The notes: generated by a model not told the origin, from the sequence alone. A DNA stretch of 64,000 bases from Octopus sinensis (GCF_006345805.1 NC_043025.1:8928001-8992000); one strand, 5' to 3'; shown: positions 25,780-63,600, counted from the first letter of the stretch. A program made the numbers and translations.

Positions 25780-26051
25780 TACAATATATATACTGAACTT
25801 TACAGAGCTCCTACCATTAATCGGTTATATTTACATACCGAATTCTACCAGTAAATAATTGTTGGTTTTTTTAAAAACCATTATAGAAATTATTTACCCT
25901 TATTATTATATACACACACATATATATGCATGTATGTATATATTTATGCATCAATTGGATATATATTTTTAGTCTTATATTTATCTTTGTATCACTTGTC
26001 TTTTACCTGTTTCAGTCAGTGGATTGTGGCCATGCTGGGGCATTGCTGTGG

Positions 26052-26406
26052 TGATCTCATTCTTGCTCACAACATCATAAGCGGAAAGTGTAACCTCTCG
26101 AAAGAGCTGTTCTTCACTCCTGCTCCAGAGCGTCGGCTGCGGGGTCATTCCAAAAAGCTCTATCTGCGACGATTTCATCTCAATCGAAGGAGAGGGGCTT
26201 TCTCCATCCGGGTTGCGGATCCGTGGAATAAGCTGCCGGACGAGATGGTGAAGATGCCGACGACCGCTCGATTCAAAGACTCCCTTGACCACAAGTGGCC
26301 TGAACTCTTTACATGAACACCACCCTGTACATAACTCTATGTCCCCATACATGGCCTTGCTTTTTGCTTTTTGAGCCAAAAATTAACTAACTAACTAACT
26401 AACTAA
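26052..26406 (+). mobile_element. CR1 LINE 3' end with (TAAC)n tail
   Basis: RLRGHSKKL...RRGAFSIRVADPWNKLPDEMV...FKDSLD is the classic CR1 ORF2 C-terminus. Confidence 0.9.
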
Positions 26407-27759
26407 TTGCCTTGCAGAATCTTAGTTGAATGAATAGGACCCACCCCCACTGGTATGTGTTAACATCCACTGGGCAGCTAACTTGTGGAACTGAACCAAG
26501 AACCATGTCATTGGAAAACAAGTTTCTTACCACACAATATAGTAGAAGACACTTGCCCAAGGTTCCACGCAGTGGGACTGAACCCGGAACCATGTGGTTT
26601 GTAAGCAAGCTACTTACCACACAGCCACTTCGACGCCTATAAAGTGACACTGGGGTAAAATATACAAAGCCCAGTATACCCATCATGACTACCCGTCTGA
26701 TAAGGGTACACTGGGCATGTGCATCACAACCATATGACCTTGCAGGTGGGGCTTCTATAATAATTATCAATATCTATGTGCGCCAGTATGGAGATACAAT
26801 GGCCTAGTGGTTAGGGCAGCGGACTCGTGGTCGTAGGATCGCGGTTTCGATTCCCAGACCAGGCTTTGTGAGTGTTTATTGAGCGAAAGCACCTAAAGCT
26901 CCACAAGGGTCTGGCAGGGGGGTTGGCGATCCCTGTTGTACTCTTTCGCCACAACGTTCTCTCACTCTTTATTCTGTTGGCCTGCTCGCTTATTGAGCGG
27001 CTGGTGTCATTTGAAGGCTAAAACAATGCAAAGCGCATTGTGACCAGCGATGTGTTGCAACATCTGATAGCCTGGTTAGTCACGGTGATCACTGTGATGT
27101 GTGTCAGTATGAATGCTTGTAAATATGTACGAATGTTATGTATGTATGTATACCACTATTCAGTTTTATTTCAAGATTTCTTGCCAATGGAGAAAGAACC
27201 AGTTTCTAACCTAGATCCAAGGCTCCTTCATTGGAATTTTAGCAACATCAACAGGATATTTTGTATGCATGTATGTATGTATGTATGTATGTAAGGAGCA
27301 CTCCATCGGTTACAACGTACAAGTGGTAGAACAATCCACAGACACACGTACCCCTAATGTAGTTCTCAGGGAGATTCAGCGTGACACAGAGTGTGACAAG
27401 GCCGGCCCTTTGAAATACTGGTACAACTCATTTTTGCCAGCTGAGTGGACTGGAGCAACATGAAATAAAGTATCTTGCTCAAGGACACAACGCGTTGCCA
27501 AGAATTGAACCCACGACCTTACGATCACCTCCGGAAACATGGGTGTTTCATTCAACATCCTTAAACAACCCTTATTCAGTGACCTTTTGAGCGGGATGTG
27601 TTACTTGACCAGAAGAAAAATTCTAACTGGGCCCCACCTGCAATGTCATATGGTTGTGATGCATGTGCCCAGTGTACCCTTATCAGATGAGTAGTCATGA
27701 TGAGTATACTGGGTTTTGTATATTTTACCCCAGTGTCACTTTAATGCACTCCTCTCTCA

Positions 27760-28230
<471 letters not shown>

Positions 28231-28947
28231 CTCCCTCATGCCTACAAAGTACCTCAGTAGGCATGATAAAGATGCACAATATATTCACTGGGTAATTTGC
28301 AAAAACCTGGATTTGCCCCATGAAAAAAACTGGTGGGAACACAATCCACCTCCTGTGCTTGAAAATGACCACATCTCACTCCTCTGGAACTTCACCATTC
28401 AAACTGACAGGAAGATAGATGCAAATAGGCCAGACATCATATTGAAAGACTTCAGACAAAGAACATGCCTCCTCATTGATATGACTGTCCCAATCGATAT
28501 AAACGTATCTGTCAAGACCTACCAAAAACTGAGCAAATATAAAGATCTTGAAATAGAAATCAGCAAAATGTGGAAGCTGAAGACTAAAACAATACCTGTT
28601 GTCATAGGTGCTCTGGGAATGATAGCGAAAGGGACTGATTGCTACCTAAATCAGATACCAGGAAACCCCAAAATGGCAGAAATTCAAAAGATAGTGCTCA
28701 TGGGAACTGCTCATATCCTACGAAAAATACTCTCTATGTAATCCCAAGGTTTAAAACAAACTTTTTTTATTTATTTATTTATTTATTTATTTTATGTATT
28801 AGACATTCACTAGTACAACACCAAAAAAAAAAAAGAAAAAAAACCCCCCAAATATATGGCACAGAACTTCCAACCTGTTGTCTCTTGAGGTCTCTGGGTG
28901 AGACTTGGAGCCAACTTGTACAGACATAAAGCAAAAGTCAAACATAG
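28231..28947 (+). mobile_element. 5'-truncated R4/Dong-type LINE (RHD zinc-knuckle end, RLE PD..D motif, 3' UTR) in (TAA)n
   Basis: YLSRHD..IHWVIC...NRPDII...LIDMTVP...KYKDLEIEI; flanked by long TAA arrays. Confidence 0.92.
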
Positions 28948-36037: not shown

Positions 36038-36137
36038 NNNNNNNNNNNNNNNNNNNNNNNNNNNNNNNNNNNNNNNNNNNNNNNNNNNNNNNNNNNNNNN
36101 NNNNNNNNNNNNNNNNNNNNNNNNNNNNNNNNNNNNN
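36038..36137. other. Assembly gap (100 N) between two SINE fragments
   Basis: Run of N. Confidence 1.
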
Positions 36138-45637: not shown

Positions 45638-46650
45638 GTGGCAAGCTGGCAGAATTGTTAGCATGCTGGGTGAAATGCTTAGCAGTATTTCGTCTGTCTT
45701 TACATTCTGAGTTCAAATTCCACTGAGGTCGACTTTGCCTTCCATCCTTTCGGAGTTGATAAATTAAGTACCAGTTGCGTACTGGAGGTTGATCTAATTG
45801 ACTGGCCCTGCTCCCCCAAAATTTCGAATCTTGTGCCTAGAGTAGAAAAGAATATTTAAAGGTGGTGGGTTGACAGAAATGTTAGCTTGCCAGGCAAAAT
45901 GCTTAGTGGTATTTCACCTGTCGCAACATTGTGAGTTCAAATTCAACCAAGGTCGACTTTGCCTTTCATCCTTTCGTGGTCGATTAAATAAGTACCAGTT
46001 ACGCACTGGGGTCGATATAATCGACTTAATACCTATGTCTGTCCTTGTTTGTCTCCTCTTTGTGTTTAGCCCCTTGTGGGTAATAAAGAACTAGGTATTT
46101 CGTCTGCCTTTACATTCTGAGTTCAAATTCCGCCGAGGTCGACTTTGCCTTTCATCCTTTCGGGGTCGATTAAATAAGTACCAGTTACGCACTGGGGTCA
46201 ATATAATCGACTTAATCCGTTTGTCTGTCCTTGTTTGTCCCCTCTTTGTGTTTAGCCCTTGTGGGTAGTAAAGAAATAGGTATTTCATCTGCCTTTACAT
46301 TCTGAGTTCAAATTCCGCCGAGTTCGACTTTGCCTTTCATTCTTTCAGGGTCGATTAAATAAGTACCAGTTTCGCACTGGGGTCGATATAATCGACTTAA
46401 TACCTATGTCTGTCCTTGTTTGTCCCCTCTGTGTTTAGCCCCTCGTGGGCAATAAAGAAATAAAATAGGAGGTGAAATGCTTAGTGGTATTTTGTCTGCC
46501 TTTACATTCTGAGTTCAAATTCCACCAAGGTTGATGTTGCCTTTCATTCTTTCAGGGTCGATAAATTAACTACCAATTGAGTACTGGGAGTCGATCTAAT
46601 CGAATGGCTCCCTCCCGCAAAATTTCGGGCCTTGTACCTAGAGAAGAAAA
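45638..46650 (+). mobile_element. SINE B cluster with tandem internal units
   Basis: Same consensus. Confidence 0.82.
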
Positions 46651-46859: not shown

Positions 46860-47355
46860 ACCCCCCCCCCACTACCCCCAACCACCACCACCACTACCAC
46901 CACCACTACCACCACTGGGAACAAATTATGCAATTAATAGAAAACAAAAGGAAATAACTCGAACCAGCAACGACAACGAATGTCACCGTTTGCGAACCCA
47001 TGAAAACCAGCTCGACTACTCTTGCTGCTGCCACCGCCACCGCCACCGCCACCACCATCGCCACCACCACCACTACCACCATCACCACCGCCACCACCAT
47101 CACCACCACCATCACTGCCGTCGCCACCACCAACATCACTGCTGTTGCCACTAAACACCACCACTACCACTACCATCACTGCCGCCGCCACCACCACCAC
47201 TGCACCACCACCACCACCACTACCACTACCATCACAACCACCACTGCTGCTACTGCTAATCTCTGCCACCACCACCACCACCACCACTGCTGCTATCACC
47301 CCTACCACCACCTCCACTACTATTATTACAGCCATGACTACCACTACTTCTAATT

Positions 47356-47403
<48 letters not shown>

Positions 47404-47760
47404 TTACTACTACTACTACTGAAACCAGCCCGGCACAACAACTGTAATGGCTCCTGCCATACCATCACCAGCACACCTACTTCTATCATCAATACCTCCA
47501 ACCACTACCACTACCATTGGTGCAGCCATCACCACCACCACCACCACCACCACCACCACCATCATCAAAATAATCCCCTACAATGACCCATAGCCATGCG
47601 AACCACCTTTCCATCACTACAACTACCACCTCCAGCACTACCACCCAAAACCATGGCTATCACAAGCCTACCGCTTCTTTGTAGCCATGACTGCCACCGC
47701 CACCATTACCACCGCTGCCCCCCCAATAACCTCCTTTGTTCCACCCCCACACCACCCAAC
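46860..47760 (+). repeat. (CAC/TAC)n low-complexity tract (a related GAT/GGT tract lies at 5170-5395)
   Basis: Direct. Confidence 0.95.
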
Positions 47761-52130: not shown

Positions 52131-52183
52131 ATATTTTTGTATGCTGATATCTTATGTAAGTTCTGTTCTTTCTCTGTTTCCAG

Positions 52184-52232
52184 GTTTGAAAAATGGCAAT
52201 GCGATTTATCGTAGCCATTGCTTTGAGTGCTC
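52184..52232 (+). CDS. First coding exon (ATG at 52193), signal peptide [13 protein letters not shown]
   Basis: tctctgtttccag|gtttgaaaaATGGCAATG...GCTC|gtaagt. Confidence 0.85.
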
Positions 52233-52438
52233 GTAAGTCTGCTTTATAATATTATATTTGTTCACATTTTATCATCCTTTGGCCCCGGATGCTGCAGTAA
52301 TTGTGCATTTACCAAATTCCTTGCACAACAAGTGAAAAACCACTGACTAAGGGATAAAATATCCGCATGTGCTATCGGTATCTGATTACATGCATTATCC
52401 CCGGGCAATATATAACTAAAAATAAAAAATATAAAAAA

Positions 52439-52478
<40 letters not shown>

Positions 52479-53402
52479 TTATAAATATAAATTAATAATT
52501 TTAAATTTTTAACTTTAAATTTAAATAATTTAAATTTTGAATTTTATATTTTATATGTTTTGCATATTATATTAATTAATTAATTTTATTCTATGTTTTG
52601 GTTTATGTTTTTCGCTGTTTGTTTTGCCTAATGGTAGTTTTATCTCTAATTTAATTTATATATATAGATGAATAAATAAATAAATGGAGTTGAACGAAGA
52701 CGTTATTAAAATTCTTTTACTTTCGACATATGTTTCGAAGACAACATTGGTTTTATTCCAAAGGAATAAACGGTGTAAAATAATGCAATCTTCTCAACAA
52801 CAAGACATAACATTTATAAATGTAATAATGTCTTATAGTTGAGATAGGTTCTCTTTCTTTCCTGATGAGAAGATTGCATCTTACACCGTTTATTCCTTTG
52901 GAATAAAACCAATGTTGTCTTCAAAACATATGTCGAAAGTAAAGAAATTTTATTAACATCTTCGTTCAACTCCATTTATTTATTTATTCATCTGTAACAC
53001 ACAAATTACTGCACATTAACCCGGAGTTTCTACCTTTGGATAGGTCGCTTCAACCAAGTTTCTGACATGAATTTGCTATCCTGGTAACAGTTCATTGAAT
53101 TTTCCATGTTAACGGTAAACATAGGATAATTCATTAACTCATCGATATATATATATATCAATATATATATATATAAGGTGGCGAGCTGGCAGAAACGTTA
53201 GCACGCCGGGCGAAATGCTTAGCGGTATTTCATCTGTATTACGTTGTGAGTTCAAATTCCGCCGAGGTCGACTTTCCTTTCATCCTTTCGGGGTCGATAA
53301 ATTAAGTACCAGTTACGAACTGGGGTCGATGTAATCGACTTAATACCTATGTCTGTCCTTGTTTGTTCCCTCTGTGTTTAGCCCCTTGTGGGCAATAAAG
53401 AA

Positions 53403-53440
<38 letters not shown>

Positions 53441-54951
53441 TAATAAAAAGAATTCCAACCTTGTCTGATTTTCACGTTTTATTTACAATCTTATAATGAT
53501 ATATTATAAGATAATATATTATAATTGAATAAAATAAAATGAAATAGTAGAATGTTAAATATTCATTCTGATTGAACTAGTACTTTCATGCATTGAATTC
53601 TACACACACATGATTTATGTATATGTGTATAGATATGTCTATATACTCATAGATATATATAGTTTACTTTAATGTGTGTTCGGCTATTTTACTATATACG
53701 TATACATACATGTATATAAAGATATTGATATTATATATAATTTTTGCATTTCTCTCCCAGTCATTGGATTAAGCTGTGGTCGTCCAACTACGGACTCGAC
53801 AACAGGTAAGTTTCTTTTTTTTTTCCATTTTAATTTTTTCTGCTTTTTCTACTTTCTAATTATTTCCATGATTAAACTCGCTAATTTTTCATTTGTATAC
53901 TGCACAACAAATTTTATTCAACAAAAACAATAACAATATTTAACAAAAAGCATCTTTAAATGACGGTCTGACCGTCTGCGAAGCAAATGGGAAACAGTAA
54001 TTGAAGTAGATGGTGAATATGCTCCAGAATAATAATTTAAAGATGTTTTTTAAATGTTGCTATCTTTTTTGTTGAATAAACTTTGTTGAAAAAAAGCCGG
54101 AATAATTATCCACCAACCCGATATATATATAATTCTCATCATGAGGGCAGCTGCATCGAACTTTCTCATGCACCAAATGGCAATTACGAAAAACCATTCG
54201 TGAAGTAAAATTATGTAGCAACACCAAATGGCGGTGCCCCAGCATGGCCACAGCTCGTGAGCTGAAACTAGATATAATAAAATAAAATAAATAAAATCAA
54301 TCATAATTTAACGTTTGCTTTCCATGAGTTGGATGGTTTGACAGGCGCTGGCTAGTCATAAGACTACATCAGGCTTCTGTGTCTGTTATGACATGGGTTT
54401 TACAACTGGGTTCCCTCCCTAACACCAGCCAACCCACAAAGTGGACTGAGTGCTTTTTACATGGCATCAGCACAGGCAAGGACAGTTTTGGCATGGTTTT
54501 TACAGTTGGATGCCCTTCCAAATGCCAACCACTTCACAGTGTGGACAGAGTGTTTTTTTTTACATGGCACTAGCACAGGTGAAGTCAGTTTTGGCATGTT
54601 TTTTAACAGCTGGATGCCCTTCCAGATACCAACCACTTGACTGGGTGCTTTTTATGTGGTACCAGCACTGGCAGGGTCACCAAGTAACTTGCAAAAGAAA
54701 GATCTTTTGTGAGGAGAAGGAGCATTGGAGGAGGCAATCTTGCATCAGATGATGTAAGGTTAAACTGTGACACAGAGACAGAAACGGGTGTCTAACTGTC
54801 ACTCTGTTGTTCTCTAAAAGGCATTCCATAATAATATATGTTATTATTTTGTTCTTTCAGATGATACAGGAAGTAGCAAAGCACAACCTTACATAGGTAA
54901 GTTATCAGTTAGTTTACCCAAATTCTAATCTATTTGTCTGTCTCTATCTGT

Positions 54952-55038
<87 letters not shown>

Positions 55039-55055
55039 CATACACACACATATAT

Positions 55056-55109
<54 letters not shown>

Positions 55110-55182
55110 CACACACACACACACATATATACATACATATATATATATATACACACACAAACACATATATATATATACATAC

Positions 55183-55228
<46 letters not shown>

Positions 55229-55229
55229 G

Positions 55230-55278
<49 letters not shown>

Positions 55279-55633
55279 GGAGTATATCCAAACTTACAGG
55301 GAAAAATGACTTATTATATTATATTTATCATTTTTTAATTTTTGGTTATAAAAAAAAATTTAATTTAAAATTCAAAATTAAATTTTTTGAAATTATATTT
55401 TATTTTTATATATTTATATATTATATATTATATTAATTATATTCATATATTTTGTTTTTTATGTATTGGTTTATGTCTATCACTGTTTGAGTTGCCTAAT
55501 GGTGTTATCTCTAATTTATATATATATACACATACATGTGTAGATAATATATGTCTATTATATATATAGATTATATATATGTGTGTACATATTATATTAT
55601 ATATATATATATATATATATATCTATATATATA

Positions 55634-55665
<32 letters not shown>

Positions 55666-55825
55666 CTTTATAGGCATATATGAGTGTGTGTGTGTGTAGA
55701 TGTGTGTATCTGTGTATATATATATGTATGTGTGTATATGAGTTTGTCTGCATTCATAATATCTGTCCTCCTATCTCTCTGTGTCTGTGTATGGGTGTAT
55801 ACACACAATACACACATGCATGCTG

Positions 55826-55859
<34 letters not shown>

Positions 55860-56134
55860 CCTTCAACAGGTAATTTTTACTCACTAGAAGAAGCAGTCAA
55901 AACGACCAAAATGACATTTAAGAGCAATTGTCGAAATGAAATTTACGTTTATATTTTTATATGTATATAGGCGTAGGAGTGGCTGTGTGGTAAATAGCTT
56001 GCTTACCAACCACATGGTTCTGGGTTCAGTCCCACTGCATGGCACCTTGGGCAAGTGTATTCTACTATAGCCTCGGGCTGACCAAAGCCTTGTGAGTGGA
56101 TTTGGTAGACGGAAACTGAAAGAAGCCCGTCGTA

Positions 56135-56176
<42 letters not shown>

Positions 56177-56200
56177 GATATATATATATATATATTATAT

Positions 56201-56234
<34 letters not shown>

Positions 56235-56443
56235 CTGTGTATGTTTGTGCATCTGTGTTTGTCCCCCTAACATCGCTTGATAACCGATGCTGGTGTGTTT
56301 TGTCCCCGTAACTTAGCGGTTCGGCAAGAGGGACTGATAGAATAAGTACTAGGCTTACAAAGAATAAGTCCTGGGGTCGATTTGCTCGACTAAAGGCGGT
56401 GCTCCAGCATGGCCACAGCCAAATGACTGAAACAAGTAAAAGA

Positions 56444-56477
<34 letters not shown>

Positions 56478-57147
56478 GTAATAATATTCATATCTATATG
56501 TATACATATCACGTGACCATGTGACCGACCAGTCCATCAGATGTAGTTACACATCGCTGGTCACAATGCGTTCGCATTGTTTTAGCCTTCAAATGACGCC
56601 ACCCCGCTGGCTAAGCGAGCAGGCCAACAGAAGAAAGAGTGGTGAAAGACTACAGTAGGGATCACCACCACCCCCTGCTGGAGCCTCGTGGAGCTTTTAG
56701 GTGTTTTCGCTCAATAAACACTCACAACGCCCGGTCTGGGAATCGAAACTGCGATCCTACGACCGCGAGTCGCTGCCCTAACCACTGGACCATTGTGCCT
56801 CCACATGTATACTTATATATGTGTGTATATATATATATATATTTATTTAGTATGTTTGTGTATACTATCCATCTCTTAGTCTATCCCATCATCTATCTAC
56901 CACCCAATCTGTCTGTCAGTTTATCTGCCTCTCTATAAATCTATGTATTGTTTTCCATGTTTACATTGATATACATACACATACCTGCATACATATGCAC
57001 ACACACACATAATTATATACACATTCATATAGATGCATGCATATATATATATGTACGTATATTTTCTTTTTTCAGTGTATCCAGGATCGAACGGTGCCAA
57101 CCCAACATACCGTAAGATATCTATTTATCTATCTGTCTGTCTATCTA

Positions 57148-57224
<77 letters not shown>

Positions 57225-57307
57225 TTGTCTATTTATCTACCTACCTATCTATCTACTTATCTCTCTCTCTCTCTATCAATCTATCTATCTATCTCTCTGT
57301 TTGTCTG

Positions 57308-57355
<48 letters not shown>

Positions 57356-57398
57356 CCTATCTCTCTCTATATATCTATTTATCTATCTATCTATCTAG

Positions 57399-57448
<50 letters not shown>

Positions 57449-57634
57449 CTCTCTCTGTGCTTTATTTCCTTGAATATCTCATTCTAATCAAATTTATATT
57501 TTGTACATATTTTTTACATACATATATTTTATATACACAAACATAATGTCAGATATATGGGTGCATATATTTATGTATATGTATATATATATATATGTGA
57601 GTGTATATGTATTATATATTTATATATTCACACT

Positions 57635-57665
<31 letters not shown>

Positions 57666-57730
57666 AGATAATATACACACACACACCCACACATATATTT
57701 GTAAATACACACACACACACGCACACACAC

Positions 57731-57808
<78 letters not shown>

Positions 57809-58608
57809 ATATATTTATATTCATGTATGTGTATATATATGTATATTCTTTTTCTTCTGCAGAGAAGGACATTGATATTTCCTTTTTGTACAATTGGTTG
57901 AAGACACATAAGAAACATCGCTTTCCGAAACCTGTTGCTGAAACTAAACCGAATCCAGAACCAGTGTCTGAGCCGAAACCCGAACCCTATTACCCTTACA
58001 TGCCGAACGTGGTGCCACCGCACACACATGTACCGAAGCAAACACTTGGCCACACGCATACTGTTACGCACAGCAGGACCGCCCACCATGTCCTACCACC
58101 ACAGTTCCCTTATGGCTATAACCCGTTCCCTTATGGCTTTCCTTCTCGATTCCAAATTCCGCCATTCCCCTACCCAACAATGAAACCGGTCAACAGATAC
58201 CCATTTCCACCTACTTTCGGTTTCCCTTTTAATCAGCAACAGAAAGAGCAAAAAAATCAAGGGCAAGTACAAAATAATTATTACCCAAAGTACCCTATAT
58301 TCCCACCGACTATAGGGCCAGTGGGACCAGTTAGAAGCCCTTTCTTGCCGCCATACCAACCTGCACCATACCCAATACCATTTACAGGGTTTCCATATGG
58401 CCAACCAAATGTCGGAAAATTCGGAGGCTACGCTACCAATGTTTACAATTCTGTGGGCAATGGTAATGGTGTGTACGGAAACCGTTTTATTAGTCCTGGA
58501 TCTTATGGTTTTAGTGGAATATTGAACGCCATTAAAGGAAGCAGTTCCATTCCCTTCCCATCGAAACCCTACCCGATCTTTCCATCGCAACCAAGATATG
58601 GTTATTAG
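52193..58608 (+). CDS. Spliced gene, join(52193-52232,53761-53805,54861-54896,57076-57111,57863-58608): 903 nt, 300-aa secreted Pro/Tyr/Phe/Gly-rich protein ([20 protein letters not shown]|[53 protein letters not shown]...[11 protein letters not shown])
   Basis: Each exon has a polypyrimidine-CAG acceptor and the four internal exons have GTAAG donors. All four introns are phase 1 and the join is an open frame that matches the non-repetitive part of ORF 57601-58608. The N-terminus is hydrophobic with a small-residue cleavage site (SCG|RP). AATAAA lies 115 nt after the stop. Confidence 0.88.
52857..52939 (+). ncRNA. Type I hammerhead ribozyme motif (G12A variant) within a fold-back repeat (52667-52993)
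   Basis: CTTTC-CTGATGA-GAAGA..TCTTC-[A]AAAC-ATAT-GTC-GAAAG: stems I, II and III all pair and the triplet is GUC. Confidence 0.7.
53176..53402 (+). mobile_element. SINE B, single-unit copy, intronic
   Basis: Same consensus. Confidence 0.85.
53761..53805 (+). CDS. 45-nt phase 1-1 exon (L)[14 protein letters not shown]
   Basis: tttctctcccag|TCATTGG...ACAACAG|gtaagt; completes the signal peptide. Confidence 0.88.
53960..54122 (+). mobile_element. Mariner 3' end fragment
   Basis: [19 protein letters not shown] followed by a TIR-like end ccaccaacccgata. Confidence 0.6.
54861..54896 (+). CDS. 36-nt phase 1-1 micro-exon (D)[11 protein letters not shown]
   Basis: ttgttctttcag|ATGATAC...TACATAG|gtaagt. 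Confidence 0.82.
   Translation: MIQEVAKHNLT
55968..56445 (+). mobile_element. SINE A, full copy, intronic
   Basis: Same consensus. Confidence 0.85.
57076..57111 (+). CDS. 36-nt phase 1-1 micro-exon (V)[11 protein letters not shown]
   Basis: ttttcttttttcag|TGTATCC...ACATACC|gtaaga. Confidence 0.82.
57863..58608 (+). CDS. Terminal coding exon, Pro/Tyr/Phe-rich body of the secreted protein
   Basis: ttttcttctgcag| acceptor; 746 nt of open, non-microsatellite, higher-GC sequence ending in TAG; recurrent FPYG and YPIFP motifs. Confidence 0.92.
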
Positions 58609-58722
58609 CCTGTCATTCTCAATTAGATGATTGAGTTAGCATAATGACGACTATTAATTAACATGGTTGGAGGAAATGAACGATAGACAACGAACTAATG
58701 GAAAATGAAAAAATGAAAATGA

Positions 58723-58728
58723 AATAAA
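58723..58728 (+). terminator. Candidate polyadenylation signal
   Basis: AATAAA 115 nt downstream of the stop codon. Confidence 0.55.
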
Positions 58729-58790
58729 GAAGACGGAGTCGGAAAGATACCAGAGTAAGGAAACTTCTTCATTCTTCTTAATGCCTTTAA

Positions 58791-59776
58791 CCCTTTAGTG
58801 TTTGCATTATTCTACCAAAATTAATGCTTCTTCATCCACATTGTTTTGAACTAATCATGGATTATCTTGTAGCTATGAGAATTTGATGAGGTAGCTGTTA
58901 ATTTTTAAAGCGATATTGTAGGGCTGGTGTGAGAGACCAGATGTGGCCATATTGAACATAAAACAGGCAGAATACTTTTGGCCGGACATGGCCAGTTTGA
59001 ACATAAAACAGGCAGAATAATTTTGGCCAGATATGGCCAGTTTGATCATAAAACAGGCAGAATACTTTTGGACAGATATGGGCAGTTTGAACATAAAACA
59101 GGCAGAATACTTTTGGCCGGATATGGCCAGTTTGATCATAAAACAGGCAGAATACTTTTGGCCAGATATGCCAGTTTGATCATAAAACAGGCAGAATACT
59201 TTTGGCCAGATATGGCCAGTTTGATCATAAAACAGGCAGAATACTTTTGGCCAGATATGGCCAGTTTGAACATAAAACAGGCAGAATACTTTTGGCCAGA
59301 TATGGCCAGTTTGATCATAAAACAGGCAGAATACTTTTGGCCAGATATGGCCAGTTTGAACATAAAACAGGCAGAATACTTTTGGCCGGATATGGCCAGT
59401 TTGATCATAAAACAGGCAGAATACTTTTGGCCAGATATAGTCAGTTTGAACATAAAACAGGCAGAATACTTTTGGCCAGATATGGCCAGTTTGAACATAA
59501 AACAGGCAGAATACTTTTGGCCAGATATGGTCAGTTTGAACATAAATCAGGCAGAAAACTTTTGGCCAGATATGGCCAGTTTGAACATAAAATCAGGCAG
59601 AAAACTTTTGGCCAGATATGGCCAGTTTGAACATAAAACAGGCAGAATACTTTTGGCCGGACATGGCCAGTTTGAACATAAAACAGGCAGAATACTTTTG
59701 GCCAGATATGGCCAGTTTGATCATAAAACAGGCAGAATACTTTTGGCCGGATATGGCCGGTTTAAATGCTAAAGTG
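58791..59776. mobile_element. piggyBac-like non-autonomous element containing ~18 copies of a 45-bp minisatellite
   Basis: TTAA|ccctttagtg ... ctaaagtg|TTAA (58787-58790, 59777-59780); 45-bp period seen directly. Confidence 0.8.
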
Positions 59777-59789
59777 TTAACCCTCTAAC

Positions 59790-60003
59790 GCGGAGTATAG
59801 TCCACTTATAATTGAATTCCATGTCGCATAGTTTTTGGCTTCTGTACTTATACTCTGCCATGAATGTCCCCCTGTCTCTAGTTCCTTTTGTGTTGATCTC
59901 CACCACGAGTTCCTAGGCCCGCCTCTCCTTCTATATCCATCTGTGGAGTATAGGCCACTTATAGTTGAATTCCATGTCACATAGTTTTTGGCTTCTGTAC
60001 TTA
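59790..60003 (-). mobile_element. RTE LINE 3' end with internal ~152-bp duplication
   Basis: GYRRRGGPRNSWWRSTQKEL...HSWQSI..EAKNYATWNSIISGL resembles RTE ORF C-termini. Confidence 0.7.
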
Positions 60004-60065
60004 AGTAGCTTGCTTACCAACCACATGGTTCTGGGTTCAGTCCCACTGTGTGGCACCTTGGGCAA

Positions 60066-60277
60066 CTATTTACATCAAAAAGGTGCTTTTTTCCTATGAA
60101 AATCCCTATTTTTTACGATTTTTTTACTGCTGTGTCGCCATTTTTCGGTGTATTTCAACCAGAAAAATGTTCACTTAAAGAGAATAACAAGCTACATAAT
60201 GCAAAATTTTTACTTTTCAAAAATTCCAATTCTAAAGGGTTGAAACAAATCTAAGCAACGCCGGGCGATACTGCTAG
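60066..60277 (+). mobile_element. Helitron 3' end with a third internal sequence
   Basis: gcaacgccgggcgatactgctag|t. Confidence 0.7.
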
Positions 60278-61349
60278 TTTATACATATAGATACATCTGT
60301 ATTTATGTGCATTCATACGTATATGCCTTTATGGATGATGGAAGCACTCCATTGGTTCCGACGACGAGGGTTCCGGTTGATCCGATCAACGGAATAGCCT
60401 GCTCATGAAATTAATGTGTAAGTGGCTGAGCACTCCACAGACACGTGTACCCTTAACGTAGTTCTCGGGGATATTCAGCGTGACACAGAGAGTGACAAGG
60501 CCGGCCCTTTGAAATGTTCAAACAGGTACAACAGAAACAGGAAGTAAGAGTGAGAGAAAGTTGAGGTGAAAGAGTACAGCAGGGTTTGTCACCACCCCCT
60601 GCTGGAGCCTCGTGGAGCTTTTAGGTGTTTTCGCTCAATAAACACTCACAACGCCCGGTCTGGGAATTGAAACCTGTGCAGGTGGCACGTAAAAAGCACC
60701 CACTACACTCACGGAGTGGTTGGCGTTAGGAAGGGCATCCAGCTGTAGAAACTCTGCCAGATCAGACTGGAGCCTGGTGCGGCCTTCTGGCTTCCCGGAT
60801 CCCCGGTCGAACCGTCCAACCCATGCTAGCATGGAGAACGGACGTTAAACGATGATGATGATGATGATGATGATCCTACGACCGCGAGTCCGCTGCCCTA
60901 ACCACTGGGCCATTGCGCCTCCACATGCCTTTATACACACACACACACACACACACATAGGAACATAACAATATCTAATATATTTTCCTGACAGTCATAT
61001 ATCTTAAAACATCTATTCACTTAAACATATATTTATATAAATACTATTTCCTTTTCGTTTTCAGAACCATCAAGGCAAACTAGAAGCTGACAAAATGCAG
61101 AAAACTTTATCAGAATCAAAGAATCTATGAATCTGGGAAAAGTGTCTGGTTGTCCATAGCGCTGCCACATTGCTGGGTTTGTTCTTTCAAAAGAGAATAT
61201 CTCACTCCGAATGAGATTTGCAAATAAACGTTGCAATTCTTTATAAAATGCATTTATTTGTGTTCTGTTATTTCTTTGTTTTTTTTGCATCTTTATCTTG
61301 TATCTTTTGTTTTTGTATTTTATTGCCTTTCTTGGTGTTCTTATTTCTT

Positions 61350-63600
61350 TGCTGCCCACAAGGGGCTAAACACAGAAGGGACAAAGAAGGACAGACAAAA
61401 GGGATTAAGACGATTGTATCGACCCCAATGCATAACTGGTACTTATCTAATTGACCCCTAAAACGATGAAGGGCAAAGTCGACCTCGGCGGAATTTGAAC
61501 TCAGAACATAGTGGCAGATGAAATACCTATTTCTTTACTGACTACCACAAGGGGCTAAACACAACCGAGAGGACAAACAAGGACACAACAACAGATTAAG
61601 TCGATTATATCAACCCCAGTGCATAACTGGTACTTATATTAATTGACCCCGAAAGGATGAAGGGCAAAGTCGACCTCGGAGGAATTTGACTCAGAACGTA
61701 GCGGCAGACGAAATACCTATTCTTTACTACAACTACCCACAAACGGCTAAACACAGAGAGGACAAACAAGGACAGACAAATAGATTAAGTCGATTATATC
61801 AACCCCAGTGCATAACTGGTACTTATTTAATTGACCCCGAAAGGATGAAAGGCAAAGTCGACCTCGGCGGAATTTGAACTCAGAACGTAGTGGCAGATGA
61901 AATACCTATTTCTTTACTACCCACAAGGGGCTAAACACAGAGAGGACAAACAAGGACACACAAACAGATTAAGTCGATTATATCAACCCCAGTGCATAAC
62001 TGGTACTTATTTAATTGACCCCGGGGAAGGATGAAGGGCAAAGTCGACTCGGCGGAATTTGAACTCAGAACGTAGCGGCAGACGAATACCTATTCTTTAC
62101 TACCCACAGGGGCTAAACACAGAGAGGACAAACAAGGACACACAAACAGATTAAGTCGATTATATCAACCCCAGTGCATAACTGGTACTTATTTAATTGA
62201 CCCCGAAAGGATGAAGGGCAAAGTCGACCTCGGCGGAATTTGAACTCAGAACGTAGTGGCAGATGAAATACCTATTTCTTTACTACCCACAAGGGGCTAA
62301 ACACAGAGAGGACAAACAAGGACACACAAACAGATTAAGTCGATTATATCAACCCCAGTGCATAACTGGTACTTATTTAATTGACCCCGAAAGGATGAAG
62401 GGCAAAGTCGACCTCGGCGGAATTTGAACTCAGAACGTAGTGGCAGATGAAATACCTATTTCTTTACTACCCACAAGGGGCTAAACACAGAGAGGACAAA
62501 CAAGGACACACAAACAGATTAAGTCGATTATATCAACCCCAGTGCATAACTGGTACTTATTTATTGCCCCGAAAGGATGAAGGCAAAGTCGACCTCGGCG
62601 GAATTTGAACTCCAGAACGTAGTGGCAGACGAAATACCTATTTCTTTACTACCACACAAGGGGCTAAACACAGAGAGGACAAACAAGGACAGACAAAAGA
62701 TTAGTCGATTATATCAACCCCAGTGCATAACTGGTACTTATTTAATTGACCCCGAAAGGATGAAGGGCAAAGTCGACCTCGGCGGAATTTGAACTCAGAA
62801 CGTAGTGGCAGATGAAATACCTATTTCTTTACTACCCACAAGGGGCTAAACACAGAGAGGACACAAGGACACACAACAGATTAGTCGATTATTCAACCCC
62901 AGTGCATAACTGGTACTTATTTAATTGACCCCGAAAGGATGAAGGGCAAAGTCGACCTCGGCGGAATTTGAACTCAGAACGCGTAGTGGCAGATGAAATA
63001 CCATTTCTTTACTATCCACAAGGGGCTAACACAGAGAGGACAAACCAGGATAGACAAATGATTTAAGTCGATTATATCAACCCCAGTGCATAACTGGTAC
63101 TTATTTAATTGACCCCGAAAGGATGAAAGGCAAAGTCAACCTCGGCGGAATTTGAACTCAGGACGTAGCGGCAGACGAAATACCTATTTCTTTACTACCC
63201 ACAAGGGGCTAAACACAGAGAGGACAAACAAGGACACACAAACAGATTAAGTCGATTATATCAACCCCAGTGCATAACTGGTACTTATTTAATTGACCCC
63301 GAAAGAATGAAAGGCAAAGTCGACCTCGGCGGAATTTGAACTCAGAACATAGCGGCAGATGAAATACCTATTTCTTTACTACCCACAAGGGGCTAAACAC
63401 CGAGAGGACAAACAAGGACAGACAAACAGATTAAGTTGATTATATCGACCCCAGTGCATAACTGGTACTTATTTAATTGACCCCGAAAGGATGAAGGGCA
63501 AAGTCAACCTCGGCGGAATTTGAACTCAGAACGTAGCGGCAGACGAAATACCGCTAAGCATTTTGCCCCGTGTGTTAACAATTCTGCCAGCTCACCACCT
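61350..63600 (-). repeat. SINE B-derived tandem array: one head (63540-63600) plus about 12 units of ~183 bp
   Basis: ccacaaggggctaaacacag-type starts near 61354, 61544, 61736, 61921, 62103, 62286, 62470, 62653, 62836, 63015, 63198, 63382. Confidence 0.92.

What the first reader, a model, noticed from the sequence alone, without database searches (positions are those of the whole stretch)
52184..58728. Micro-exon gene for a 300-aa secreted Pro/Tyr/Phe/Gly-rich protein with a suckerin-like His/Thr block
Seen: four tiny exons (49, 45, 36 and 36 nt) hidden in microsatellite-rich introns join in phase 1 to a 746-nt exon. The ORF track shows only the last exon, with a junk N-terminus. The protein has a signal peptide, an acidic Thr/Ser/Pro N-terminus, a KKHR basic site, PEP/KPEP repeats, a proline-bounded block [29 protein letters not shown], three FPYG and two YPIFP motifs, a Gly/Tyr/Asn segment and a C-terminal RYGY. 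The mature chain has no Cys. Established: coleoid suckerins alternate proline-flanked His/Thr/Ala/Val beta modules with Gly/Tyr modules, and mollusc matrix proteins such as shematrins end in basic/Tyr tails. Inference: a lineage-specific extracellular structural or coacervating protein (sucker cuticle, beak, skin or egg case). I do not recognise it as a named gene.
Basis: partly seen in the sequence, partly recalled or inferred. Interest (0 to 1): 0.78.

Follow-up and report, generated by a model that had tools for sequence, protein, structure and literature searches.

The report
Octopus orphan secreted proline-rich protein gene
The five-exon gene is real and encodes a secreted, disordered, proline- and aromatic-rich protein found only in octopuses, but it is already in RefSeq (misnamed "extensin-like"), is not a suckerin relative, and its tissue and function are still unknown.

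Summary
Exons of 49, 45, 36, 36 and 746 nt have canonical AG/GTAAG signals. All are in phase 1 and join into a 300-aa ORF. That protein is 100% identical to RefSeq XP_036370824.1 ("extensin-like", Octopus sinensis), so the gene model is not new.

Orthologues exist in O. vulgaris, O. bimaculoides and one unidentified octopod. The O. vulgaris record has six isoforms; three skip exactly one micro-exon. All five exons and their splice sites are conserved in O. bimaculoides. dN/dS is about 0.3-0.4.

No other relative turned up in 1.84 billion representative proteins, Pfam, NCBIfam or PDB. AlphaFold2 predicts disorder apart from one short helix.

The suckerin and shematrin analogies fail their defining features. 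There is one His/Thr block, not 3-13 [P-M1-P-M2] units. The KKHR site and the RYGY terminus are not conserved. The database names "extensin-like" and "osa" are low-complexity artefacts.

The gene probably runs beyond 58728, through a conserved 3'UTR donor at 58755 to a terminal exon at 61065.

Best reading, by inference only: a self-associating extracellular matrix or coacervate protein. Interest is modest.

The parts
52184..52232 (+). Exon 1. The CDS runs from the ATG at 52193 and encodes residues 1-13 plus the first base of codon 14 (n- and h-regions of the signal peptide). The 5' boundary is uncertain: either an AG acceptor at 52182-52183 or a nearby transcription start.
   Evidence: The exon, its GTAAGT donor and 60 nt upstream are conserved in O. 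bimaculoides (53/60 upstream, 37/40 CDS).
53761..53805 (+). Exon 2, 45 nt, phase 1-1. It encodes the end of the signal peptide (LIGLSCG; predicted cleavage after G20, at 53780) and RPTTDSTT. It is a cassette exon in O. vulgaris.
   Evidence: O. vulgaris isoform P0005 skips exactly this exon.
54861..54896 (+). Exon 3, 36 nt, phase 1-1 ([12 protein letters not shown]). It is a cassette exon.
   Evidence: O. vulgaris isoform P0001 skips exactly this exon.
57076..57111 (+). Exon 4, 36 nt, phase 1-1 ([12 protein letters not shown]). It is a cassette exon.
   Evidence: O. vulgaris isoform P0009 skips exactly this exon.
57863..58608 (+). Coding part of exon 5, 746 nt including the TAG stop. It encodes residues 53-300.
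   Evidence: The acceptor is conserved in O. bimaculoides and in a third octopod (L001). dN/dS is 0.28-0.42.
57877..57912 (+). The only predicted secondary-structure element: an amphipathic helix, [12 protein letters not shown] (residues 58-69), containing the only Trp. L61, Y62, W64, L65, K66 and K69 are invariant across the family, as are D57 and S59 just before the helix.
   Evidence: AlphaFold2 helix at residues 5-16 of the exon-5 translation, with pLDDT about 62-66. Invariant columns.
58015..58101 (+). Pro-bounded His/Thr block (residues 104-132, 7 His). It lies inside the longest aromatic-free stretch of the protein and is the most CA/AC-rich part of the CDS.
   Evidence: Six residues shorter in the third octopod. 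Matches translated CA/TG microsatellites in tblastn.
58411..58551 (+). Best-conserved segment (residues 236-282): the Gly/Tyr/Asn-rich stretch [20 protein letters not shown]...[12 protein letters not shown].
   Evidence: Runs of invariant columns. No predicted structure.
58609..58754 (+). 3'UTR continuation of exon 5, ending at a GTAAGG donor at 58755. It also contains the 58730-58754 segment used as coding sequence in O. vulgaris isoform P0007.
   Evidence: The donor is conserved in O. bimaculoides and L001. The AATAAA reads AATATA in O. bimaculoides and is absent in L001.
61065..61250 (+). Probable terminal exon, with acceptor ttttcag at 61058-61064 and AATAAA at 61223-61228. The end coordinate is approximate.
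   Evidence: The tail of O. vulgaris isoform P0007 (NHQGKLEADKMQKTLSESKNL) maps here at 95% identity. Sequence read.

Best explanation
This is the Octopus sinensis copy of a single-copy protein-coding gene so far found only in octopuses. It makes a secreted protein of about 31 kDa that is basic (pI about 9.7), Cys-free and almost wholly disordered.

Shown:
- The exon structure and its conservation.
- Transcript-derived isoforms in O. vulgaris.
- Purifying selection.
- No detectable relatives outside octopods.
- Predicted disorder apart from one amphipathic helix.

Inferred mechanism:
- After signal-peptide cleavage behind G20, the chain is released as a weakly charged polymer (K+R+D+E = 12% of residues).
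- Its many Pro-flanked Tyr/Phe residues (FP, PY and YG dipeptides are over-represented) act as stickers for self-association. The result would be a dense coacervate or an amorphous extracellular matrix.
- The single His/Thr block (7 His in 29 residues, no aromatics) would keep the chain soluble in acidic secretory granules. It would lose charge at seawater pH, or bind metal, and so trigger condensation.
- Tyr residues could then be cross-linked.
- The three symmetric cassette micro-exons vary only the short acidic Thr/Ser N-terminal spacer.

The material or tissue is unknown. Candidates are chitinous linings, beak or radula, stylet, embryonic or paralarval structures, and the egg envelope.
For: Gene reality:
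- Canonical splice signals and phase.
- 100% identity to RefSeq XP_036370824.1.
- All five exons, with the same micro-exon lengths and splice sites, are present in O. bimaculoides.
- The exon-5 acceptor is conserved in a third octopod.
- O. vulgaris isoforms skip exactly exon 2, 3 or 4. In that annotation, alternative forms were added only from PASA transcript assemblies built from Iso-Seq and RNA-seq (PMC10700109).

Selection: dN/dS is 0.41 overall and 0.28-0.42 for exon 5.

Secretion: the N-terminus has a hydrophobic core [13 protein letters not shown] and the small residues S18 and G20 at -3 and -1. Phase-1 introns at signal-peptide ends are typical of secreted proteins (established knowledge).

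Disorder and stickiness:
- AlphaFold2 mean pLDDT is 49, with one helix only.
- Composition is 18% Pro and 16% aromatic, with a charged-residue fraction of 0.12.
- FP, PY and YG dipeptides are enriched at z = 4.2, 2.8 and 2.9.
- The His/Thr block lies inside the longest aromatic-free stretch.

Precedent: His-dependent, pH-controlled solubility and assembly, and Tyr cross-linking, are documented for squid suckerins. A coacervate route is known for squid beak proteins (my knowledge; PMC9999432, gives only their composition).
Against: No expression, localisation or biochemical data could be reached. Searches for the accessions and names in 8.4 million papers and in two octopus atlas supplements found nothing.

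His content is only 3% overall, far below beak or sucker-ring proteins. There are no long tandem repeats, which most structural proteins have. Aromatic spacing does not differ from random. The alignment behind the AlphaFold2 run had only 4 sequences, so low confidence is weak evidence for disorder. Composition alone also fits soluble proline-rich secretory proteins.
Confidence: 0.45

Rival explanations
1. A soluble secreted proline-rich protein with a non-structural job. It might work in saliva, gut, mucus or egg fluid as a binder, lubricant, surface coat or antimicrobial, like salivary proline-rich proteins, caseins or Pro-rich antimicrobial peptides.
For: The features are the same: a signal peptide, disorder, high Pro/aromatic content and basic pI. 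There are no long tandem repeats and no Cys or other cross-linking domain. Evolution is fast, with a hypervariable segment at residues 63-74, as is common in secretory proteins at an interface.
Against: The most conserved part is a Gly/Tyr/Asn low-complexity segment typical of matrix proteins. There is no N-glycosylation sequon and only a short Thr/Ser cluster, so it is not mucin-like. No expression data exist either way.
Confidence: 0.25
2. A regulator of a mineralised tissue (statolith, or the mineral phase of the stylet). It would be a functional analogue of amelogenin or casein, a disordered Pro/His/Gln-rich protein that controls crystal growth.
For: The overall layout resembles that class: a signal peptide on small 5' exons plus one large 3' exon, a Tyr/Trp-containing N-terminal helix, a His-containing Pro-rich core and an acidic Ser/Thr-rich N-terminus. 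This resemblance comes from my own knowledge of those proteins, not from a test.
Against: The mature chain has only 10 acidic residues and no conserved Ser-x-Glu-type sites. The acidic N-terminus is the least conserved part and is optional by splicing. All introns are phase 1, whereas SCPP genes use phase 0 (established knowledge). No homology was detected.
Confidence: 0.1
3. A precursor that is cleaved into bioactive peptides (a prohormone or neuropeptide-like protein), with KKHR as a convertase site.
For: It has a signal peptide and one dibasic KK(HR) site at 69-72. The O. vulgaris transcript evidence includes nervous tissue among its sources.
Against: The site is absent in O. vulgaris (KTYG), O. 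bimaculoides and the third octopod. There is no other dibasic site, no Gly-basic amidation signal and no repeated peptide copies. The conserved parts are long low-complexity stretches rather than short peptides.
Confidence: 0.05
4. An annotation artefact, or a young transcribed locus with no protein function.
For: It has low-complexity composition, no domain and no relatives outside octopods. Part of the CDS looks like a translated CA microsatellite.
Against: The reading frame, the micro-exon lengths and all splice sites are kept at dS about 0.37-0.58 across three lineages, with dN/dS 0.3-0.4. Three independent annotations exist, one with transcript-derived isoforms.
Confidence: 0.03

Closest known systems
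Suckerins (sucker ring teeth proteins of squids and cuttlefish)
   Same: Secreted cephalopod low-complexity proteins. They have a Pro-bounded His/Thr-containing segment and a Gly/Tyr-rich segment. A plausible shared principle is His-controlled solubility plus aromatic self-association.
   Different: Suckerins have 3-13 alternating [Pro-M1-Pro-M2] units, Ala-rich M1 modules and GGY/GHY/GGL-rich M2 modules, and they occur in animals with ring teeth. This protein has one block of each kind, 100 residues apart, with the Pro/Phe/Tyr-rich bulk in between. It has one GGY, no detectable homology, and octopuses lack ring teeth.
Squid beak His-rich proteins (DgHBPs)
   Same: Secreted, disordered, basic proteins that lack a chitin-binding domain. 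They are thought to enter a chitin scaffold as a coacervate and then be cross-linked. This is the mechanism proposed here by analogy.
   Different: DgHBPs have C-terminal tandem pentapeptide repeats rich in Gly/His/Tyr/Phe/Ala and a much higher His content. This protein has 3% His, 18% Pro and no tandem pentapeptides.
Schistosome micro-exon genes (MEGs)
   Same: The product is secreted. The internal exons are short and symmetric (45, 36 and 36 nt), separated by long introns, and skipped individually to vary the protein.
   Different: In MEGs the micro-exons make up most of the CDS (abstract; the roughly 75% figure is from my own knowledge). Here they make up 13% (117 of 903 nt), and one conventional 746-nt exon carries 82% of the protein. 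There is no sequence relationship and the phylum is different.
Tyr/Pro-rich secreted matrix and adhesive proteins (mussel foot protein-1; insect low-complexity Pro-rich cuticle proteins)
   Same: They are basic, Cys-poor and Pro/Tyr-rich, have a signal peptide and are disordered. Their Tyr residues are used for cross-linking or adhesion (my own knowledge).
   Different: Those proteins are built from many tandem copies of a short unit. This one is non-repetitive apart from a few 4-5-residue motifs. No homology was found.
Plant extensins and Drosophila Osa (the names attached by automatic annotation)
   Same: Only a high proline content.
   Different: There is no Ser-Pro3-5 repeat (SPP and SPPP counts are 0), no ARID domain and no Pfam hit of any kind. 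The names are low-complexity artefacts.

Membership tests
Suckerin | Modular [Pro-M1-Pro-M2]n architecture with n = 3-13 (PMC9999432) | tested here: not met
   There is one His/Thr block (104-132) and one Gly/Tyr/Asn segment (236-282), and they are not adjacent. No repeated modules were found.
Suckerin | M1 modules of 10-15 aa rich in Ala/Thr/His; M2 modules with multiple GGY/GHY/GGL | tested here: not met
   The block has 25 residues between the Pro pairs, with only one Ala. The counts are GGY 1, GHY 0 and GGL 0.
Suckerin | Detectable sequence relationship to known suckerins | tested here: not met
   A profile search of 1.84 billion representative proteins returned only the octopod cluster and one spurious NHL-repeat protein. 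Whether suckerins are in that library was not checked directly.
Suckerin | Component of sucker ring teeth | not testable with these tools
   Octopuses have no ring teeth (PMC9999432).
Shematrin | Gly-rich repeat domains and a conserved basic/Tyr C-terminus (my own knowledge) | tested here: not met
   Gly is 8.7% with no XGnX arrays. The RYGY end is not the terminus in O. bimaculoides or the third octopod, where PPVILN or PPVIFNYN follows.
Extensin (RefSeq name) | Ser-Pro3-5 repeats; Pfam extensin models | tested here: not met
   SPP and SPPP counts are 0. There is no Pfam hit at E <= 10.
Trithorax group protein Osa (RefSeq name of the O. bimaculoides orthologue) | ARID DNA-binding domain; a large nuclear protein | tested here: not met
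   There is no Pfam hit for P0002. The protein has 308 aa and a signal peptide.
Schistosome-type micro-exon gene | Short symmetric exons between long introns, encoding a secreted protein | tested here: met
   The three internal exons are 45, 36 and 36 nt, all phase 1-1. The introns are 751-2179 nt. A signal peptide is present.
Schistosome-type micro-exon gene | Micro-exons make up the bulk of the CDS | tested here: not met
   117 of 903 nt (13%). Exon 5 alone is 746 nt.
Schistosome-type micro-exon gene | Protein variation by skipping of individual micro-exons | tested here: met
   O. vulgaris isoforms P0005, P0001 and P0009 equal precise skips of exon 2, 3 and 4. Transcript-based origin is inferred from the annotation method. 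The reads themselves were not inspected.
Squid beak His-rich proteins | Tandem Gly/His/Tyr/Phe/Ala pentapeptide repeats at the C-terminus | tested here: not met
   Only one 5-mer occurs twice (YPIFP). His is 3%.
Vertebrate SCPP (amelogenin/casein) | Phase-0 introns throughout and descent from SPARCL1 (my own knowledge) | tested here: not met
   All four introns are phase 1. No homology was detected.

The most novel reading that the evidence does not exclude
The protein is the main matrix component of an octopod-specific extracellular material, for example the shed sucker lining, the Koelliker bristles of hatchlings, or the egg chorion and stalk. It would assemble by a His-switched, Pro-aromatic coacervation chemistry unrelated by descent to suckerins and beak proteins. 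Its His/Thr switch would have been born from an exonised (CA)n microsatellite, and cassette micro-exons would tune its N-terminus.
Probability: 0.2. Interest if true: 0.55.

Novelty: new member of a known kind. Interest (0 to 1): 0.3.

Why it matters
If the protein does build an octopus-specific material, it would add a third, independently evolved cephalopod structural protein type beside suckerins and beak proteins. It is small, Cys-free and non-repetitive, so it should be easy to express.

It is also a clean example of three things: a taxonomically restricted gene under selection, cassette micro-exons outside flatworms, and possibly coding sequence born from a microsatellite.

As it stands, it is an uncharacterised but already annotated orphan gene. 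The practical value of this check is to correct the misleading database names, remove the suckerin analogy and extend the gene model at its 3' end.

Tried and rejected
- Pfam, NCBIfam and PDB sequence searches gave no hits. This covered the full model, exon 5 and the orthologues.
- The profile HMM search of 1.84 billion representatives gave one extra hit, P0010. It is an NHL-repeat protein matched through several low-scoring stretches, and I rejected it as spurious.
- A word-index search restricted to the conserved C-terminal segment, and one using the family alignment, found no further members.
- tblastn of the protein against the window found no paralogue. The weak hits at 46.9-47.8 kb are trinucleotide low-complexity sequence, and those at 51.5-52.1 kb are translated TG/CA arrays.
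- Literature searches led nowhere. I tried the accessions, 'extensin-like'/'osa' with octopus, sucker cuticle proteomics, beak/radula transcriptomes and the SRR run numbers. The one paper containing both 'extensin' and 'Octopus sinensis' concerns a moth cuticle gene.
- The supplements of two octopus atlas papers contain no mention.
- The exact O. vulgaris protein is not indexed for a DNA look-up.
- Aromatic-residue spacing does not differ from shuffles, so it gives no support for evenly spaced stickers.
- Rfam and tRNA scans of 45-64 kb found nothing.
- I did not run a fold search, because the model is too low in confidence to give meaningful matches.

Full report
**1. The observation**

Exact look-up places the exons as follows.

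| Exon | Coordinates | Length |
|---|---|---|
| 1 | 52184-52232 | 49 nt |
| 2 | 53761-53805 | 45 nt |
| 3 | 54861-54896 | 36 nt |
| 4 | 57076-57111 | 36 nt |
| 5 | 57863-58608 | 746 nt |

Each acceptor is a pyrimidine tract ending in AG, and each donor reads GTAAG. The ATG at 52193 has an in-frame TGA two codons upstream and a good context, AAAAATGG. All four junctions are in phase 1, and the joined CDS of 903 nt gives 300 residues.

The mechanical ORF list shows only exon 5. It is fused to a microsatellite-encoded N-terminus as ORF 57601-58608. The introns are dominated by (AT)n, (TATC)n and (TG)n arrays and SINE-like elements.

The repeated ones are not a by-product of composition: none of 5000 shuffles gave three FPYG or two YPIFP.

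**2. The gene is real and already annotated**

The spliced product is letter-for-letter identical to RefSeq XP_036370824.1, 'extensin-like [Octopus sinensis]'.

Orthologues:
- Six O. vulgaris isoforms, CAJ1099187-92. The full-length form is 96% identical.
- O. bimaculoides XP_052834237.1, now named 'trithorax group protein osa' and earlier 'uncharacterized LOC106881862'. It is 71-74% identical.
- A 1-kb genomic contig from an unidentified octopod, found in sequencing runs SRR11869384, SRR11869385 and SRR11869390. It is 62-66% identical.

In the O. bimaculoides scaffold, all five exons sit in the same order, the micro-exons have the same lengths, and all splice sites are intact. The exon-5 acceptor is also intact in the third species.

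Three O. vulgaris isoforms correspond exactly to skipping exon 2, exon 3 or exon 4. I reproduced each by skipping the same exon in the window. In that annotation, alternative forms were added only through PASA updates. Those updates used transcript assemblies built from Iso-Seq of developmental stages and RNA-seq of adult tissue (PMC10700109). So the junctions very probably have read support, although I could not inspect the reads.

Nei-Gojobori dN/dS is 0.41 for the whole CDS (O. sinensis against O. bimaculoides). For exon 5 it is 0.28-0.42 across the three pairs, with dS of 0.37-0.58. This indicates a protein under purifying but relaxed selection.

**3. Correction at the 3' end**

O. vulgaris isoform P0007 leaves exon 5 early and then uses two further segments. 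The first is 58730-58754, which is followed by GTAAGG at 58755. The second is an exon that starts at 61065, behind the acceptor ttttcag. An AATAAA lies at 61223-61228.

The 58755 donor is conserved in O. bimaculoides and in the third octopod.

The likeliest structure is therefore a 3'UTR that continues to 58754, an intron from 58755 to 61064, and a terminal exon near 61065-61250. That intron holds an 18-copy 45-bp array. The 5' limit of exon 1 is likewise open.

**4. What the protein looks like**

The N-terminus [20 protein letters not shown] has a charged start and a 13-residue hydrophobic core. S and G occupy positions -3 and -1. Cleavage after G20 would remove the only Cys.

The mature chain has these properties:
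- 280 residues and pI about 9.7.
- 18% Pro and 16% aromatic residues.
- 12% charged residues (K+R+D+E) and 3% His.
- No N-glycosylation sequon.

AlphaFold2, run on the four-sequence family alignment, gave a mean pLDDT of 49 and a single helix. That helix is [12 protein letters not shown], residues 58-69. It holds the only Trp, and most of its hydrophobic face is invariant. With so shallow an alignment, this is suggestive of disorder rather than proof.

Conservation is highest in the Gly/Tyr/Asn segment at 236-282 and in the Pro-aromatic core. It is lowest in the N-terminal spacer encoded by the micro-exons (dN/dS 0.61) and in residues 63-74.

**5. Relatives**

None were found outside octopods.
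- A profile of the family scanned against 1.84 billion representative proteins returned only its own cluster and one spurious NHL-repeat protein.
- Three word-index searches of 5.8 billion proteins returned the same three clusters.
- Pfam, NCBIfam and PDB gave nothing.
- No paralogue lies in the window.

Rapid divergence of low-complexity sequence could hide older relatives. 'Octopod-restricted' therefore means 'as far as sequence search can see'.

**6.

Suckerins are defined by 3-13 alternating Pro-bounded modules. M1 modules are Ala/Thr/His-rich, and M2 modules are rich in GGY, GHY and GGL. Suckerins build ring teeth, which octopuses lack (PMC9999432). This protein has a single His/Thr block containing one Ala. 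Its single Gly/Tyr segment lies 100 residues downstream, and it has one GGY. It is not a suckerin.

The 'basic/Tyr tail' is not a conserved terminus, and KKHR is unique to O. sinensis. The two database names also fail. There are no SPPP repeats, no ARID domain and no Pfam hit.

The micro-exon label is half right. The three internal exons are short, symmetric and individually skipped, as in schistosome MEGs (abstract). However, they carry only 13% of the CDS.

**7. How it most likely works (inference)**

The composition is that of a weakly charged disordered chain with many Pro-flanked Tyr and Phe residues. FP, PY and YG dipeptides are enriched at z = 4.2, 2.8 and 2.9. Such chains tend to self-associate.

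The His/Thr block contains no aromatic residue and lies inside the longest aromatic-free stretch of the protein. It carries 7 of the 9 His residues. It would be protonated in acidic secretory granules and neutral in seawater. That is the logic documented for His-controlled solubility of suckerins.

I therefore favour a secreted matrix or coacervate protein that condenses on release and may be cross-linked through Tyr. I put this at about 0.45 because nothing about tissue or biochemistry could be reached. The main rival is a soluble proline-rich secretory protein (0.25). A mineral-regulating role (0.1), a peptide precursor (0.05) and an artefact (0.03) are less likely, for the reasons given under the rival explanations.

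**8. A side observation on origin**

The His/Thr block is encoded by CAC ACA CAT and CAC ACG CAT ACT runs. It is the most CA/AC-rich stretch of the CDS in all three species (0.31-0.41 against 0.15). In tblastn it matches translated TG/CA arrays elsewhere in the window.

His and Thr codons contain CA and AC by definition, so this is not independent proof. It is compatible with birth of the block from an in-frame (CA)n microsatellite in a genome rich in such arrays.

**9. Verdict**

It is partly wrong: the protein is not suckerin-like or shematrin-like, it has no conserved KKHR site, the gene is already in RefSeq, and the gene's end is misplaced.

This is a new, uncharacterised member of the broad class of taxon-restricted secreted low-complexity proteins. 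Interest is modest (0.3) until expression or material localisation is known.

Noticed in passing
window 58609-58754, 58755-61064, 61065-~61250: The 3'UTR appears to be spliced. A GTAAGG donor at 58755 is conserved in two other octopods and leads to a terminal exon at 61065, with AATAAA at 61223-61228. One O. vulgaris isoform (P0007) also uses a donor inside exon 5 (about 58473/58474) and an acceptor at 58729/58730, which gives a different C-terminus.
   Followed up: partly
window 58015-58101: The His/Thr block is the most CA/AC-rich part of the CDS in three species and matches translated TG/CA microsatellites. It may have arisen from an in-frame (CA)n array. It is 6 residues shorter in the third octopod.
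   Followed up: partly
window 53701-53760, 57016-57075, 52133-52192 compared with L004: The 60 nt upstream of exons 1, 2 and 4 are more conserved between O. sinensis and O. bimaculoides (87-93%) than the micro-exons themselves (81-83%). This pattern is typical of regulated cassette exons.
   Followed up: partly
window 57892-57927 (residues 63-74): A hypervariable linker lies just after the conserved helix. Seven of the 12 differences between O. sinensis and O. vulgaris fall here. The KKHR 'basic site' exists only in O. sinensis.
   Followed up: yes
window 52663-52781 and 52878-52996: An inverted repeat with 119-nt arms, 94% complementary and 96 nt apart, lies in intron 1. It looks like a foldback or MITE-like element.
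   Followed up: partly
window 58937-59763; 61342-63552; 53174-53407; 45640-46600: A tandem array of a 45-bp unit (18 copies) lies in the 3' intron. A 184-bp unit (12 copies) lies downstream of the gene. The 184-bp unit belongs to the same repeat family as a single element in intron 1 (opposite strand) and an array at 45.6-46.6 kb. It also occurs twice in the O. bimaculoides scaffold.
   Followed up: partly
window 25930-26316 and 27716-28741: Two ORFs have tails that I recall as resembling the C-terminal parts of non-LTR retrotransposon proteins, embedded in AT-rich trinucleotide arrays. Pfam gave no hit, so this stays an impression.
   Followed up: partly
window 36038-36137: A run of 100 N, which is an assembly gap.
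   Followed up: no
window 46900-47450: A GC-rich trinucleotide low-complexity stretch with strong negative GC skew. It produces Pro-, Thr- and Gly-rich pseudo-ORFs on both strands and explains the weak tblastn hits there. It is not a paralogue.
   Followed up: partly
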